A stretch of 64,000 nucleotides of DNA from Euprymna scolopes (lineage: Eukaryota): NCBI GenBank assembly GCA_053919585.1, contig CM132793.1; one strand, given 5' to 3'. Made by a program: the position numbers and the translations under genes. How positions within the stretch are numbered: position 1 is the stretch's first letter; the number at the start of each line of letters is the position of its first letter. Positions 31,062 through 36,989 of this stretch are shown one piece after another. The notes below the pieces were generated by a model, which searched no databases, was not told where the DNA came from, and was given only the letters and a program-made list of their open reading frames with translations.

Positions 31062-32502
31062 CCTATCGCCAAATATTTATTTCCCCAAAATATATGCCTT
31101 TTTACTCTGGTTGAAATTCAAGGGGTCTATCAGTTTCCTTTTACTGCCAGATGACGTTTTCAGTACTAGTTTTAGGGGGTTTCAGGAGAAATGCGTCAAG
31201 CAGTAGGTCTAACTCCTCTTCTTCTGGTGGAATTTGCCTTAACTCGTTCGAAGTGCGTTTGCGTGTCTGGTGATCCTCTCACCATGCAGACCATATGGCC
31301 GATCCTGTTCTTTATGGTCCCTTACTCCCAAAAGATATTATTCTCTTTGTTCATCTGGAAGTATATTTTCCGTCCCGGCAAATAATTCTACTTGTGAACA
31401 GTTGTCTTTGTGAGCTTTACTTGTTTTGGTAATAATTTGTCAAAAACTGGCCGTGTTCTTCTCGACCACATTTCTTCCGACGTAGATATCTGAGCTGGTG
31501 TATTCACATTAGGCTTTATGCGGTACATTTGAAGAAATTGTTGCAACGCATTTTTGGATGAAGTGCCCTTTGCCTTCTTCCTGACCCTCTTCAATGTGTC
31601 AACAAATCTTTCGGCCTGTCCGTTTGATCTGGTGTGGTAAGTCGGGGTTGAGATGTGCTCCACTTAGAAGTCCTTTATAAACTCTTTAAATCCTCGAATA
31701 TAAACAAGGTTGTTATCTGACCCTAAACAGTCGACCACTCCGATTCCTGCAAATAACCCATGAAGAGTTTGTTTTTTTATAGTGGAATTAGTAGTTCAGC
31801 TTTTGCACCTAAAGACTTAAGGTCACTTAGGGACGCTACTGACTACTTTGAGGTGGTACTGCCCATCATGTGCATCCGCGTAGTCCATGTGTATCCGTGA
31901 ACATGGTAGTTAGCTTTTTGCCATGGGTTTAATTGAGATTGTGGCGCTAGTGCACGTCTTCTGCATATTTTCGACTTTTCGTCAATAACCATGCTCATGT
32001 TTTTCCAGTACACGTATCGACGCATTAAACTCTTCATTCTAGTTGCGCCAGATTTTCCTGTATGAAAACTATTTAAGATTTTCTTTTGGATGGTCGCTAG
32101 AACCAATATCAACCAATATAATAATCTCTGGAACCTATATAGTAAAATCTGGTTGCATATTGAAAAGACCTCTACTAATTGTTATCGGTTTGCAGTTTTT
32201 CCTTACTTTCTCGTCGCTTTCGCCTTCTTTTCTTATATCATCCAGAATAACGGGGAGTTCTTTAAGAGGGTTGCGTAGGGTCGAACTATAATCTCTCTCT
32301 TATCGTAGTGACGTGATCATCAAGTCTTCAAGTGGTTCAGAATTCCTTGATATTTACTGGGATAACCTGTCTGTGTGTCCTAATTTGACGGAACGCACTC
32401 GCTTCGCCAACAACGCACTGCTAAGAGAAAGAGTAAAAGCATGAAGATTATTTATCGATTCAGAGAAGGCGTGACTTGTACGGACTCATTGACCATTGTA
32501 CT

Positions 32503-34050
32503 GTACCTATTTACTATGCCTCCCCACGGGACAGAGTTAGACACCAGGGTCGTTTTTTAACGCGGAGTAAAGGTAAAAAAATAAAAATTGTCTCAGTCGT
32601 GAAGGATTTCTCCTCCGCCGAAAGAGAACAAGAAATGGAAGTGCAGCATCTGAAGAACAGATGGTATTTATTTGCTCCCCCACCGAGCAAATTAGGCACA
32701 AGGCCGATTTTTAAAGTGAGGAGTGAAGGGGAAATGGGGACCAGCTCCCCGGGGAGTAGGGGAACTGGATAGTGACAATTGGTATGAAGGGTTTCCCCTA
32801 CATTGACCAAGGTCTTATATGTGGAGTTGCCCCCACATATGGTCTTTGCTTGCAGTATCTGCCGGAACAGATGGTATTTATTTGCTCCCCCACCGAGCAA
32901 ATTAGGCACAAGGCCGATTTTTAATGTGAGGAGTGAAGGGGAAATGGGGGCCAACTCCCCGGGGAGTAGGGGAGCTGGATAGTGACAATTGGTATGAAGG
33001 GTTGCCCCTTCATTGACCAAGGTCTTATATGTAGGGTCGCCCCCACATATGATCTTTGCTTGCAGTACCTGTCGGAACAGATGGTATTTATTTGCTCCCC
33101 CACCGAGCAAATAAGGCACAAGACCGATTTTTAATGTGAGGAGTGAAGGGAGGGGGAAGGGAAAAAGGGGACCAGCTCCCGAGAGGTGGGAAATGGGAGC
33201 TGGTTAAAGGTCAGGCATGTGGGGTTGCCCCCACATCTGGTCTTTGCTAGTCATAGCTAGTCATAGCTTGCAGTATCTGTCGGAACAGATGGTATTTATT
33301 TGCTCCCCCACCGAGCAAATTAGGCACAAGGCCGATTTTTAATGTGAGGAGTGAAGGGAGGGGGAAGGGAAAAAGGGGGACCAGCTCCCGAGAGGTGGGA
33401 AATGGGAGCTGGGTAATGGTCAGGCATGTGAGGTTGCCCCCACATCTGGTCTTTGCTAGTCATAGCTAGTCATAGCTTGCAGCATCTGCCGGAACAGATG
33501 GTGTTTATTTGCTCCCCCACTGAGCAAATTAGGCACAAGGCCGTTTTTAATGTGAGGTAAAAACCAGCTCCCCTAAAAGGGGTCACTCTGGTTACCAAAA
33601 ATAATAATTGTCCCAGTATAGAGGGTTTCCCCTCCATTGACTGGTACAAATTATCTTAAGTGCAGCATCTGCCGGAACAGATGGTATTTATTTGCTCCCC
33701 CACTGAGCAAATTAGGCACAAGGCCGTTTTTAATGTGAGGTAAAAACCAGCTCCCGTAAAAGGGGTCACTCTGGTTACCAAAAATAATAATTGTCCCAGT
33801 ATAGAGGGTTTCCCCTCCATTGACTGGTACAAATTATCTTAAGTGCAGCATCTGCCGGAACAGATGGTGTTTATTTGCTCCCCCACTGAGCAAATTAGGC
33901 ACAAGGCCGTTTTTAATGTGAGGTAAAAACCAGCTCCCCTAAAAGGGGTCACTCTGGTTACCAAAAATAATAATTGTCCCAGTATAGAGGGTTTCCCCTC
34001 CATTGACTGGTACAAATTATCTTAAGTGCAGTGCATCTGCCGGAACAGAT
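32503..34050 (-). repeat. Tandem array of 8 structured modules (minus-strand order C,C,C,B,B,A,A,D)
   Basis: The plus-strand anchor gaacagat recurs at 32655, 32865, 33075, 33283, 33492, 33675, 33858 and 34043 (periods 210, 210, 208, 209, 183, 183, 185). Constant ~75-nt block with type-specific middles. Confidence 0.95.
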
Positions 34051-34088
34051 ACTACACTTTGATCTTGGCCCGCAGACCAAGAATCGGT
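34043..34088 (-). ncRNA. U2 snRNA-derived 5' fragment (nt ~1-46), truncated
   Basis: Minus strand accgattcttggtctgcgggccaagatcaaagtgtagtatctgttc vs recalled invertebrate U2 atcgcttctcggccttatggctaagatcaaagtgtagtatctgttc. The last 24 nt are identical, including GTAGTA, and stem I is preserved (tcttggtc-tgcg-ggccaaga). Confidence 0.9.
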
Positions 34089-36989
34089 GTACGTATATTA
34101 TTTTGAATTTAATAAGCATGCTAGAAAGAAAACGAGTTTGTTCTTTTTCCATGTGAATTGAATTATCTTACTGACCAAGGCGAGTGTTTAATTATTGTTT
34201 TTTCCTTAGCGTACAACCGACCGTCTAGCCGATGGCATGTCAACTCTGAACACCAGACGACCATGGCGTCCTGCTGCATGAAATATCATATCTGGTCGCC
34301 TTTGACCAGAATAGCGATTGGACGAGATAATAGGTCACAGTGAGCACCATTTTTAACTATTCGAACCCAATCCATACATTTCTAGGCCCAGTTCCAACAT
34401 TTTTCCTTCGTCAGTAGTTCATTTAAATGCGCGCACAATGTGTGCATATTAAGAATTAAGCTTGATAGAATTAGCTAAGCCTAAAATACTTTCCAGTTTG
34501 ATTATGTCGTATGACTCAGGCTTTTTGTTTTGCTATGGAACTCTCCGGACTAATCCGATTACCATTCCTATCTGCCCAGGGTATTTCATTTGATCGAAAA
34601 AATATTCACATTTGGTGTCTGTAAGTGTAGAGGAACCCTCGTTCATTCTTTCGAATACCTGAAAAACGCTATATCTATGTTGCTGTATAGATTCGCTTTT
34701 CATTTGAATATCGTTGAATTATCCGATGGATATATCAAACCCACTCAACATCGTGTTGATTAGCTGTTGAAAGATAGCTTGTGGGGCTTTGATCCCGACA
34801 GCAAACTTATTAAAATTAAATAGGCTCTTGTGAGTGGTAATACAGAACAGTTTTGAGCTTTCTTCTTCAACGGGAATCTAAAGGTAGGCTTCCCGCAGAT
34901 CTATTCTTGGAAATATTTTCCCTCCATTTCGTTTCCGAAAAAATCTTCCTCGAGGTAAAGGGAGCGAGTAATTATGATCTTAAGTCTAATATTCTTATCC
35001 ACTATTTTATCATCATGTCATTCCCTATATTTTGGTCATCCGCTTGAGTCCACGTTGTTTATACGTAGTTCTTGCGGGGTCTTTTTGATCTGCAATGATA
35101 GGCTTTGTGTCCATTGCATCTACAGCGATCAAATTTCACGGGTGGTATGGACAATCTTTAGCAAATGAAGTTCTCCACATCCTTGGAATGAGTAACGGGG
35201 CAACTCAGGAATGTTTCTTTACTGTTTTAAGGGTAAGTTTTTTTGTTATTTCGTATGTTTTTAATATGTGCAACACCTGTTTCTTAATTATTTTTCGAGT
35301 GTTGGTTCTTCGAGATAATTCTTTGGCACTCCTCAGCCCATTGTGAAAGTGTTATGTATGGTGCTTTATCCAATCTGGTTAGTGTCAGGCGTCTTAGTAA
35401 AGCATCCTTGGTCGATACTAAGCCTTGAATAAAATATCCGGACCTTAAAGTTGTCGGCCGTCAATGAGGATAGTCCGAAGCCGTCACAATGTCGGTTTAC
35501 GACTGAAGCAAATGTAGTGTAATCTTAATCTTTTTTGTGGATCAAGTTGATGGATCACCATCTTTTCTGGAATAAGCTGATTTTTCGACAGTATTATTAT
35601 ATCAACGATGTCACTATTTCGTCGAGGCGTAATTTGCTCGTCTGTTTAGGAATGACGTAGTCCACGGACTTAGTATGTTCTGCAGCTCGCATTTCTTTGT
35701 ACTAAAAGACGACTCTTCATCTGCCTGCTCCATGACTTGCAACCAACCCTGAATACGTCACGAAATCTGTGAAAATAGGCTTCAAAAGTCCACTCCTTTT
35801 CGGGACGATAGACTTAGACGATAGAACTGCTCCTAATGCTGAATAAATCGCGTCTTTTTTAAAATTCTGATCTGACACGTTGCGGTCTTTCTTCGTTTGG
35901 TAACAGTTCCAATTTTACTTTGCTTGTGACTGCGTTTTTCTTCTTCTTCTCTCTCTCTCTTTTCTCTTTTCTATCTCTTTTTTCTGTTGTTTCTCTTTGT
36001 TCATCTTCTCTTTTTTCTGTAATTCTAAAGTATGAGTTTGTTGTAACCGTATCTTTTCAAATAGTTGCCTTGAAAGGTTTTCCATTAAAAAAATTAAATA
36101 GACTCAACAGAACAATCTGTGTCTAAGAAATGATAAACAAAAACCGCGCGACTTCACGGAGAAGATATGCCAAATATATATTCACGAAGATAAATAAAAA
36201 ATAACGAGCATTCGGTTTTAACAGAAAGAATTATTCAGTTTTCCACAGAGAACAAAAGAATTTATTTTAACTCTCTTTCGTAAAAAAGTACGAAGCATTT
36301 AACGTCCGATAGAATTTCGAATAATAAACGAAGTGAAAGCAAAAATACCGTCGCGTTTTCGCGTTTTCGCGTTTTCGCGTTTTTTGCATTGGATTCTCGT
36401 AATGAATATATGCGGTTTCAATCCTTCGTAGAGCCGATGTACTTTTCTCTTTTTGTTTTACCGGGAAAAGGAAACCATGAAGCTATCGACCAAGAAAAGT
36501 TTGGTCACCGAAACATTTATTTCCCCCCCCCCCAAATATATACTGATAATCGAATATGGGTTTTTGCCACGCGGAAAAATTACGATATTTGCACAAGCGA
36601 AACATTGGGTAAGCCTATAAAAACAACAAAAAAATATTTTCTTTTCTTTGTGTGATTAAAAAAAAAGGTTCACTTTTAACAAACAGTCTACAAATAACGA
36701 TATTTGGATAAAGAGAAAAAAAACTCAGGGCAATAAAATTGTCATTGAACATAAGAAGTGAATTAACTGCATTTTCTTAGCAATAGAAAGCCTTGTATTT
36801 TTTCTACTCATGGCGTTTTGAAAAATCCACATTTCCCTTGGCGAGGATTTTATTTTTGTTACTAAAACACTTCATGGAACCACCATTTACCTTTCAAAGC
36901 AGGTAAAATACGAGTTTACTAGAAGTTGGTTTCTTATCCAAAGAAAACGATTATGGGGACTTTCTTTGAATACCGGACGTCGGCAATGA

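What the first reader, a model, noticed from the sequence alone, without database searches (positions are those of the whole stretch)
32396..34089. U2 snRNA-headed cassette carrying a polarised array of eight structured RNA modules
Seen: on the minus strand the insert opens with a U2 5' end (34088-34043). Right after the branch-point-recognition sequence GTGTAGT it continues into eight non-coding modules: C 34050-33866, 33865-33683, 33682-33500; B 33499-33291, 33290-33083; A 33082-32873, 32872-32663; D 32662-~32503. Every module begins with ATCTGTTC, the U2 sequence that follows GTGTAGT, and A-C end in a shared tail (..ctcacattaaaaa(t)cggccttgtgcctaatttgctcRgtgggggagcaaataaaYacc). Known: the non-LTR families Utopia and Keno insert site-specifically at this part of U2, and snRNA-headed SINEs (SINEU) exist in crocodilians. 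Inference: this could be a non-autonomous U2-targeting system in which short structured RNAs are added serially at the U2 site, giving a leader-plus-array architecture that is itself mobile. I do not know of a description of this arrangement.
Basis: partly seen in the sequence, partly recalled or inferred. Interest (0 to 1): 0.92.

Follow-up and report, generated by a model that had tools for sequence, protein, structure and literature searches.

The report
Self-stacking U2-headed retroposon array
A short mobile element carries the front end of the U2 spliceosomal RNA gene, which is the landing site of a U2-targeting jumping gene, so miniature copies of that jumping gene have stacked up behind it one after another, giving a time-ordered array repeated at tens of thousands of places in this mollusc genome.

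Summary
On the minus strand, 32503-34088 is a 38-nt U2 5' head, seven 183-210-nt units (C,C,C,B,B,A,A) and a terminal unit D. The element ends at 32503, not 32396.

Each unit is a miniature of a LINE. Its first ~22 nt and a hairpin match the 5' end of 7-kb LINEs (APE endonuclease + RT) that interrupt this genome's real U2 gene array, and its tail matches their 3' tail. Each tail is followed by (A)TCTGTTC, the published Keno/Utopia insertion site.

The family is very large: 33,208 head→unit, 46,579 tail→unit and 29,930 head→D junctions.

The evidence favours one-by-one insertion at the head-proximal site:
- Arrays differ at every locus.
- Members of a doublet are no more alike than random copies.
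- Pairwise identity falls from C (98%) through B (97%) to A and D (93-94%).
- Order is 84% "upstream is younger".
- Some junctions keep partial or whole heads.
- Solo head+D SINEs with target-site duplications are common and look younger than array Ds.

The partner LINE is Keno-like, not Utopia-like, and nothing shows that whole arrays move. No insertion was observed directly. I class it as a new variant of known kinds.

The parts
34051..34088 (-). U2 snRNA 5' head (U2 nt 1-38: stem-loop I and the branch-point-recognition sequence GTGTAGT). It supplies the upstream half of the LINE target site. No U2 promoter or spacer lies upstream.
   Evidence: Rfam U2 from model position 1; 30/38 identity to canonical U2; only U2 nt ~1-46 of the 764-bp U2 unit match the window; heads of other copies
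33866..34050 (-). Unit C1 (185 nt, subtype C183): mini-LINE unit nearest the head, inferred to be the youngest insertion
   Evidence: C units are 98.3% identical between loci
33683..33865 (-). Unit C2 (183 nt)
   Evidence: fold z = -3.8 on this strand
33500..33682 (-). Unit C3 (183 nt)
33291..33499 (-). Unit B1 (209 nt, subtype B208)
   Evidence: B208 units are 96.7% identical between loci
33083..33290 (-). Unit B2 (208 nt)
32873..33082 (-). Unit A1 (210 nt)
   Evidence: fold z = -4.6; A units are 93.6% identical between loci
32663..32872 (-). Unit A2 (210 nt)
   Evidence: the downstream A of AA doublets looks older than the upstream A (0.936 vs 0.957)
32503..32662 (-). Terminal unit D (160 nt). 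With the head it forms the founder SINE. Its diverged tail ends ...GGCATAGTAAATAGGTAC, which is the 3' end of the whole element; there is no poly(A).
   Evidence: (29,930 head->D junctions; solo head+D copies with TSDs)
33866..33908 (-). Example of the shared 3' tail (GGCCTTGTGCCTAA, hairpin TTTGCTC/GAGCAAA with a G-rich loop, then ATAAACACC), homologous to the 3' tail of the U2-resident LINEs. Inferred to be the RT recognition element.
34029..34050 (-). Example of the shared unit 5' end (ATCTGTTCCGGCAGATGC...). ATCTGTTC is U2 nt 38-45, the downstream half of the target. It forms a UNCG-capped hairpin and is homologous to the LINE 5' end ATCTGTTCTCAGTGCTTACTGC.

Best explanation
The locus is a founder SINE (a U2 5' head fused to unit D) that landed here by ordinary target-primed reverse transcription. 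It then served as a portable landing pad. The head keeps the sequence GTGTAGT|ATCTGTTC, which is the insertion site of a Keno-like LINE (APE endonuclease plus RT) that lives in this genome's U2 gene array. Miniature, internally deleted derivatives of that LINE (units A, B and C: ~22 nt plus one hairpin of the LINE 5' end, GNRA-capped hairpins, and the LINE-type 3' tail) were copied in trans by the LINE machinery and inserted one at a time at that site. Each insertion leaves its tail abutting the old ATCTGTTC and recreates head|ATCTGTTC upstream, so the next unit goes in next to the head. The array is therefore a stratified record. Here the order of arrival was D, then A2, A1, B2, B1, C3, C2, C1. 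SHOWN: the anatomy; the LINE in the true U2 array and its domains; homology of unit ends to LINE ends; the junction classes; the age gradient; the lack of positional orthology; solo head+D copies with TSDs. INFERRED: trans-mobilisation by this LINE; endonuclease nicking at nt 37/38 of the head; insertion in place at dispersed copies rather than in master copies; the way the 5' end is joined (homology between the RNA's ATCTGTTC or head and the target).
For: (1) Genuine U2 genes form a 764-bp tandem array on contig C9. The array is interrupted by 7.06-7.6-kb elements with ORF2 = Exo_endo_phos + RVT_1 + zf-RVT and a 766-aa ORF1. Their 5' junction is U2 ...ATCTGTTCT|CAGTGC. Their tail (C-rich tract, GGCCTTTGTGCCTAA, hairpin, CTAAATAC) aligns with the unit tails. 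(2) A 31%-identical relative from a marine metagenome also sits in a U2 gene: U2 nt 1-28 | LINE ... poly(A) | GTATCTGTTCTTATCAG. (3) PMC4640811 reports that U2 downstream of Utopia starts at nt 39 and that the Keno flank is identical, which is the flank seen after every unit tail. (4) 56,081 tail->unit/D junctions are exact at that site, against 3,967 that retain TCAAAGTGTAGT (U2 nt 26-37); some retain a whole head. That pattern fits a fixed 5' joint with a variable bottom-strand nick. (5) Every one of 40 loci has a different array. (6) Between-locus identity is C 0.98, B 0.97, A 0.936, D 0.930. Within-locus identity equals between-locus identity. (7) Doublets show no position-specific sites, and within-doublet identity equals that of random pairs; the upstream A looks younger than the downstream A (0.957 vs 0.936). 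Order is concordant with 'upstream younger' in 769 pairs against 142. (8) 10 of 12 head->D sites not selected for array length are solo ~200-nt SINEs, and at least five have clear 10-14-bp TSDs. Solo Ds look younger than array Ds (0.964 vs 0.928, p about 0.014). (9) The LINE is abundant, many copies have intact ORF2, and copies are often spaced ~7 kb apart. Full-length copies elsewhere in the genome also start behind a head.
Against: No insertion event was observed directly: there is no empty-versus-filled orthologous site and no polymorphism. No unit was found in a genuine U2 gene (0 of 37). The LINE copies inside the U2 array have 3' junctions at U2 nt 1 or nt 23, not nt 38. 16-18% of unit pairs are out of age order. 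Head variants of arrays (GGCCAAG, GGGACAAG) differ from the commonest solo head (GGTCAAG). The source transcripts are unknown, and the RNA-seq coverage is two-stranded and looks passive. The LINE tails found are homologous to the unit tail but not identical, so the exact autonomous partner of A, B and C has not been identified. The sampled loci were chosen by similarity to this array, and the solo Ds were chosen by an exact 32-mer. Age is inferred from pairwise identity, which also depends on how varied the source copies were.
Confidence: 0.65

Rival explanations
1. RNA-level concatenation. Each array was made in a single retrotransposition event: the reverse transcriptase started on a D tail and jumped repeatedly from the 5' end of one head/unit RNA to the 3' end of another (template switching), so the array was never built step by step in DNA.
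For: Template switching is the mechanism proposed for the recurrent 5' additions in SINEU (PMC4494074). Junctions that carry partial or complete heads look like RNA 5' ends joined to tails. Unique arrays and the absence of positional orthology fit this model as well.
Against: It does not predict the C>B>A>D identity gradient, the 84% age-ordered arrangement, the upstream A of a doublet being younger, or array Ds being older than solo Ds. About 93% of the internal junctions counted are exact at the known endonuclease site, with no untemplated nucleotides. That would require all donor RNAs to start precisely at ATCTGTTC.
Confidence: 0.17
2. DNA-level tandem duplication. An ancestral composite SINE (head-C-B-A-D) retrotransposes as a whole, and its internal repeats expand and contract by unequal crossing-over or replication slippage, as in a VNTR or satellite.
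For: Same-type doublets and runs are frequent, and the C..B..A..D tendency is shared between loci. Genuine higher-order DNA duplications do exist (L022 repeats a block; a 281-bp periodic head+unit array at C1:30311073-30313906).
Against: Neighbouring same-type units are no more similar than random copies from other loci (B208: 0.972 vs 0.971). No diagnostic sites mark position 1 versus position 2. No two arrays are alike. Unit types differ in age. Partial heads at junctions (3,967 copies) cannot arise from in-register duplication. A, B and C have different cores.
Confidence: 0.1
3. The units are U2-derived bodies: variant U2 snRNA 3' halves, that is, a rearranged U2 gene or pseudogene cluster, rather than LINE derivatives.
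For: Rfam U2 aligns end to end over head+C1, including an Sm-like ATTATTTTTGG followed by two hairpins.
Against: The score of 36.9 is below the gathering score of 46, and nearly all of it comes from the first 46 nt. BLAST of the genome's own U2 unit matches the window only at U2 nt ~1-46. There is no promoter or spacer. The unit ends match LINE ends instead. Copy numbers run to tens of thousands, with TSDs.
Confidence: 0.02

Closest known systems
Keno (Tx1-group, APE-type LINEs that insert specifically into U2 snRNA genes; Kojima & Fujiwara 2004, as cited in PMC4494074 and PMC4640811)
   Same: The autonomous element here has an APE endonuclease followed by RT and an ORF1, sits inside U2 genes, and its mini-derivatives are followed by U2 from nt 38/39 on. 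A 31%-identical relative with a poly(A) tail sits in a U2 gene of another organism.
   Different: Keno has been reported from vertebrates, lancelet and cnidarians; this host appears to be a mollusc. The tail is a structured hairpin ending ...TAAATAC(C), not poly(A). The copies in the U2 array abut U2 nt 1 or nt 23 at their 3' side. Most copies lie outside U2 genes, behind portable U2 heads. Membership of the Tx1 clade was not tested phylogenetically.
SINEU (U1/U2-headed SINEs of crocodilians; Kojima 2015, PMC4494074)
   Same: A SINE whose head is the 5' part of U2. A Tx1-type partner is inferred. There are recurrent additions at the 5' side. Tandem copies that sandwich a target-site duplication are attributed to sequential insertion. 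The same open question applies: how is an element with an external-promoter head transcribed?
   Different: SINEU has poly(A) tails, targets a Mariner transposon, gains U1/U2 pieces (not LINE-derived units) at its 5' end, and forms at most dimers. Here the target is the SINE's own head, the added pieces are complete mini-LINE units, and arrays reach 8 to 15 or more units at tens of thousands of loci.
SIDEs: short internally deleted derivatives of the rDNA-specific LINE R2 (Eickbush laboratory; from my own knowledge, not checked in the paper library)
   Same: Non-autonomous elements made of the 5' and 3' ends of a site-specific LINE that use the same target site and machinery. In R2, target sequence at the RNA 5' end helps the 5' joining.
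   Different: R2 uses an RLE endonuclease and a ribozyme, and it stays in rDNA. No ribozyme was detected here, and the target has been exported across the genome on a SINE.
Utopia (RLE-type U2-targeting LINEs; PMC4640811)
   Same: The same U2 insertion site. Utopia-1_NVit is occasionally inserted in tandem in U2 genes.
   Different: Utopia encodes a restriction-like endonuclease. The LINE here encodes an APE endonuclease, so it is not Utopia.
Head-to-tail arrays built by successive retrotransposition, such as the HeT-A/TART telomeric arrays of Drosophila (from my own knowledge)
   Same: Polar arrays whose order reflects the order of arrival.
   Different: Those grow on chromosome ends without an endonuclease target. 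Here growth is at an internal, sequence-specific site carried by the element itself.

Membership tests
Keno / Tx1-type U2-specific LINE (the autonomous partner) | APE-type endonuclease N-terminal to RT, plus an ORF1 | tested here: met
   Exo_endo_phos at residues 4-230, RVT_1 at 508-759, zf-RVT at 977-1032; 766-aa ORF1.
Keno / Tx1-type U2-specific LINE (the autonomous partner) | Copies inserted in U2 snRNA genes | tested here: met
   four insertions in the 764-bp U2 array on C9; a distant relative (L073) is flanked by U2 on both sides.
Keno / Tx1-type U2-specific LINE (the autonomous partner) | 3' flank is U2 from about nt 38/39 onward | tested here: inconclusive
   Met for all units and for relative L073. 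The four LINE copies in the U2 array abut U2 nt 1 (L044-46) or nt 23 (L043) instead.
Keno / Tx1-type U2-specific LINE (the autonomous partner) | RT groups within the Tx1 clade in a phylogeny | not tested
Utopia (NeSL-like) | Restriction-like (PD..D/ExK) endonuclease C-terminal to RT | tested here: not met
   an APE endonuclease at the N-terminus and no RLE domain.
SINEU (snRNA-headed SINE) | Head derived from the 5' part of U1 or U2 snRNA | tested here: met
SINEU (snRNA-headed SINE) | 3' poly(A) tail and sequence relationship to SINEU-1/2/3 | tested here: not met
   the element ends ...GTAAATAGGTAC with no poly(A). Sequence similarity to the crocodilian SINEU families was not tested.
SIDE-like internally deleted LINE derivative (units A, B, C, D) | Both termini homologous to the partner LINE, with the coding region missing | tested here: met
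   alignments of the 5' ends (ATCTGTTCY..CAG.TGCT, and the CCAG..GGGG..TGG hairpin) and of the 3' tails (GGCCTT(T)GTGCCTAA, hairpin, TAAATAC). The homologous stretches are short and diverged.
U2 snRNA gene (Rfam RF00004) | Score at or above the gathering threshold, with an upstream snRNA promoter | tested here: not met
   36.9 bits, below 46; no U2 spacer or promoter; only U2 nt ~1-46 are present.
Satellite / VNTR made by DNA duplication | Neighbouring repeats are each other's closest relatives | tested here: not met
   within-doublet identity equals that of random between-locus pairs (B208: 0.972 vs 0.971; C183: 0.982 vs 0.981).

The most novel reading that the evidence does not exclude
A site-specific retrotransposon has escaped the copy-number limit of its natural target. 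A SINE carries the U2 target site in its own head and has sown roughly 60,000 decoy landing pads across the genome. The LINE and several generations of its mini-derivatives then colonise these pads one unit at a time, always next to the head. Each locus thereby becomes a leader-proximal, chronologically ordered array, a fossil stratigraphy of retrotransposon activity formally comparable to how CRISPR arrays grow. The genuine U2 genes, meanwhile, stay largely free of units.
Probability: 0.5. Interest if true: 0.72.

Novelty: new variant of a known kind. Interest (0 to 1): 0.62.

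Why it matters
U2-targeting LINEs are thought to be held back by the small number of U2 genes (PMC4640811 discusses this). Here the target appears to have been made portable by a U2-headed SINE, with about 63,000 head junctions, and LINE-derived units have piled up on it, at least 80,000 of them. 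Four things follow. First, it would be a natural example of a retrotransposon multiplying its own safe landing site. Second, it gives thousands of independent, time-ordered arrays from which the succession of SINE subfamilies can be read directly. Third, it extends snRNA-headed SINEs from crocodilians to a mollusc and links them directly to a Keno-like partner, which the SINEU paper could only infer. Fourth, it shows that SINE-type repeats are under-annotated in large mollusc genomes where SINEs are reported as scarce (PMC8967140, if the host is a decapodiform cephalopod, which is my inference). In practical terms, the endonuclease-target pair is a compact, naturally validated system for studying sequence-specific target-primed reverse transcription.

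Tried and rejected
1. Units as U2 bodies: the Rfam U2 full-length alignment suggested this. I rejected it because the genome's own U2 matches only nt ~1-46 and the unit ends match LINE ends.
2. Known ribozyme or other RNA family in the units: Rfam found nothing at gathering thresholds for the whole window, and only chance-level hits at E up to 10.
3. Units inserted in true U2 genes: the pattern tail+ATCTGTTCTTATCAG gave 37 hits, and none continues into U2. They lead into other elements that share the ATCTGTTC start.
As a result LINE tails outside the U2 array, solo head+A/B/C copies and master copies could not be examined.
5. The genome search family search with RF00004 failed twice. A pattern search replaced it.
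6. Naming the LINE clade from named homologues: the 77 homologues are all unnamed or uninformative.
7. A TSD for the window copy itself: only an ambiguous GTAC(A) is present, so it is not convincing.
8. Dimer units (B-B, A-A) as inherited blocks: rejected.
9. RNA evidence for a capped minus-strand transcript: not obtained. Coverage is on both strands, and 74% of reads run on into unlike sequence. An apparent start cluster at 32572 lies next to the A-rich stretch of D and is probably oligo-dT internal priming (my inference).
10. Coding potential: the ORFs in the array (the longest is 201 aa with a GTG start) are frames running through repeats, with no support.

Full report
WHAT IS THERE. Read on the minus strand, window 32503-34088 is one element. 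It opens with a 38-nt head, ACCGATTCTTGGTCTGCGGGCCAAGATCAAAGTGTAGT (34051-34088). Seven units follow: C1-C3 of 183-185 nt, B1-B2 of 208-209 nt and A1-A2 of 210 nt. A 160-nt terminal unit D closes it and ends ...GGCATAGTAAATAGGTAC at 32503. All eight units start with ATCTGTTC. A, B and C share the first 22 nt (ATCTGTTCCGRCAGRTRCTGCA) and a ~60-nt tail (...CACATTAAAAA(T)CGGCCTTGTGCCTAATTTGCTCRGTGGGGGAGCAAATAAAYACC). D has diverged versions of both.

The head matches this genome's own U2 nt 1-38 at 30 of 38 positions. Nothing of the U2 promoter or spacer is present. Rfam's U2 model aligns over head+C1 but scores below threshold (36.9 against 46 bits), and most of that score comes from the head. 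As RNA of this strand the units fold into a UNCG-capped 5' hairpin and GNRA-capped hairpins, with z-scores of -3.8 (C) and -4.6 (A), against about -2 for the opposite strand. D folds no better than shuffled sequence.

IT IS A VERY LARGE DISPERSED FAMILY. The genome is 5.9 Gb. A search with the array returned 7,951 first-look candidates. All 30 loci fetched have the same design: a head, usually 5'-truncated somewhere within U2 nt ~5-26, then a mixture of C, B and A units, then usually one terminal D with the same sharp 3' end and no poly(A). Genome-wide junction counts at two or fewer mismatches (reversed controls gave 0) are: head->C/B/A unit 33,208; tail->unit 46,579; tail->D 9,502; tail->partial head 3,967; head->D 29,930. 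Read layout shows very high depth in DNA of two organisms, and short-read contigs bridge both unique flanks of this locus. An assembly collapse is therefore excluded as the origin of the architecture, although the exact unit order at this locus was not verified with long reads.

THE AUTONOMOUS PARTNER. The genuine U2 genes form a 764-bp tandem array on contig C9. That array is interrupted by elements of 7.06-7.6 kb. They encode a 766-aa ORF1 and a 1149-aa ORF2 containing an APE-type endonuclease, a reverse transcriptase and a zf-RVT domain. This is an L1/Tx1-type LINE, as described for Keno, not the restriction-like-endonuclease type of Utopia. Their 5' junction is U2 ...GTAGTATCTGTTCT|CAGTGCTTACTGC.... 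Their 3' end is a C-rich tract, GGCCTTTGTGCCTAA, a hairpin and CTAAATAC. Both ends, and a CCAG..GGGG..TGG hairpin in the 5' UTR, align with the unit ends. The units are thus internally deleted mini-versions of such a LINE.

The LINE is abundant (21,185 first-look candidates). Many copies have intact 1149-1151-aa frames, and copies often lie ~7 kb apart in head-to-tail clusters. The few full-length copies of this subfamily elsewhere in the genome are also preceded by the U2 head (58 junctions). A relative only 31% identical, with the same domain layout, lies in a marine-metagenome scaffold between U2 nt 1-28 and poly(A)+GTATCTGTTCTTATCAGCTTAATA, so U2 targeting is a property of the lineage. Kojima & Jurka (PMC4640811) state that U2 downstream of Utopia begins at nt 39 and that Keno's flank is identical. 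That is the (A)TCTGTTC found after every unit tail here.

HOW THE ARRAY AROSE. I compared three models.

Model (a), DNA tandem duplication of a composite SINE, predicts that neighbours are the closest relatives and that arrays are shared between loci. Neither prediction holds. All 40 arrays examined differ. Same-type units within a locus are exactly as similar as units from different loci. In 19 AA, 22 B208-B208 and 7 C183-C183 doublets there are no position-specific diagnostic sites, and within-doublet identity equals that of random pairs.

Models (b), template jumping within one event, and (c), serial insertion over time, both give unique arrays. Only (c) predicts the observed stratigraphy:
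- Between-locus identity falls from C (0.98) through B (0.97) to A (0.936) and D (0.930).
- 84% of ordered unit pairs have the younger type upstream, 82% when D is left out.
- The upstream A of an AA pair looks younger than the downstream A (0.957 vs 0.936).
- Ds that terminate arrays look older than Ds of solo elements (0.928 vs 0.964, permutation p about 0.014).

Junction anatomy also fits endonuclease-directed insertion. About 93% of the internal junctions counted are exact at the Keno site. About 7% retain TCAAAGTGTAGT (U2 nt 26-37), and some retain a complete head. A fixed upstream joint at ATCTGTTC combined with a variable bottom-strand nick (nt 37/38, 25/26 or 0/1) would give exactly these classes. 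The LINEs in the U2 array show the same range, with tails abutting U2 nt 1 or nt 23.

THE FOUNDER. Of 12 head->D sites taken in chromosomal order rather than chosen for array length, 10 are solo ~200-nt head+D SINEs with variably truncated heads. At least five have clear 10-14-bp target-site duplications, for example ATTAACAAGTTT and CAATAAATAGATCC. The other two are arrays. Arrays L010 and L021 are flanked by 16-17-bp duplications. Head+D is therefore the dispersing element, and the arrays sit on a minority of copies that look older.

Arrays can also be stacked upstream of other terminal elements that begin with ATCTGTTC, including a LINE 5' end (L048) and further families (L049-L053). They can also follow LINE-type tails (L003, L026). 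In two LINE copies within the true U2 array, the upstream U2 fragment carries GGTCAAG. This is the variant typical of solo SINE heads and of RNA reads, whereas canonical U2 has GGCTAAG. That suggests the head sequence travels with the RNA and takes part in 5' joining.

WHAT IS NOT SHOWN. No insertion was caught in the act; I have no empty site and no polymorphism. No unit lies in a genuine U2 gene. The source transcripts are unknown: poly(A) RNA-seq covers both strands, and most reads run on into other flanks, as expected for passive transcription of many copies. Tx1-clade membership was not tested. The host is a mollusc according to run labels. The 5.9-Gb size and the chromosome-scale contigs numbered up to 46 suggest a decapodiform cephalopod, but that is my inference.

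COMPARISON AND NOVELTY. Each component is known: Keno-type U2 targeting, snRNA-headed SINEs with a Tx1-type partner and recurrent 5' additions, tandem SINEU-3 copies that sandwich a target-site duplication (PMC4494074), occasional tandem Utopia insertions (PMC4640811), and internally deleted derivatives of site-specific LINEs. What appears to be new is the combination and its scale. The element carries its partner's target site in its own head, has spread that target to tens of thousands of loci, and has been colonised repeatedly by several generations of mini-LINE units into polar arrays of up to a dozen or more units. I found no description of this, or of any U2-headed SINE in molluscs, in the paper library. 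I class it as a new variant of a known kind.

Its central inference, serial addition at the U2 site by a non-autonomous U2-targeting system, is supported by indirect but convergent evidence. The proposal of Utopia/RLE as a possible partner, and the idea that the whole cassette is mobile, are not supported.

Noticed in passing
G000:C9:168867294 onward (loci L035-L047): The genuine U2 snRNA genes form a near-identical 764-bp tandem array of hundreds of copies. The pattern gave 1,538 hits genome-wide, many on C9. At least four 7-kb LINE insertions interrupt the array, and L047 contains a 100-N gap.
   Followed up: partly
G000:C19:152711311-152791055; C4:62475985-62540021; C38:61449414-61498272; C46:97.6-98.1 Mb: Copies of the Keno-like LINE with intact ORF2 occur in clusters spaced ~7 kb apart, that is, head-to-tail LINE arrays away from the U2 locus. 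This is probably the same self-stacking behaviour at full length. The DNA could not be fetched.
   Followed up: no
G000:C1:30311073-30313906: Eleven head->unit junctions with a regular 281-bp period: a satellite-like array of head+unit repeats. It suggests that DNA-level amplification also occurs at some loci.
   Followed up: no
L049-L053, L055, L025, L014 and L027: Further element families share the U2 head and the ATCTGTTC start but have different bodies, e.g. ATCTGTTCTTAACAGATGCTGCACTTACATTTGTAAC... and ...TTGTGATATAAAGTGGGG.... There is also another tail type whose hairpin is compensated (AATGCTG/CAGCATT instead of TTTGCTC/GAGCAAA).
   Followed up: partly
L073 (marine metagenome scaffold, 5,620 bp): A complete APE+RT+zf-RVT LINE with a 486-aa ORF1 and a poly(A) tail is inserted in a U2 gene of an unidentified marine eukaryote, between U2 nt 1-28 and nt 36-60. 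It is a Keno-like element from outside the taxa listed for Keno in PMC4494074.
   Followed up: partly
L012:2470-2640 (minus strand): Between the head and the first C unit lies an 82-nt insert. It consists of only the first ~18 nt of a unit, then unrelated GC-rich sequence, then a second partial head (AAGATCAAAGTGTAGT). It looks like an aborted or heavily truncated insertion at the same site.
   Followed up: no
L022 (G000:C10:38473978-38478341): A block (head, B208, B208, A, partial head, truncated units) is repeated two to three times. This is a higher-order DNA duplication superimposed on an array.
   Followed up: no
window 32514-33119 (-): A 201-aa open frame with a GTG start runs through D, A2 and A1. 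The A unit is 210 nt, a multiple of three, so frames can persist across repeats. There is no evidence that it is coding.
   Followed up: partly
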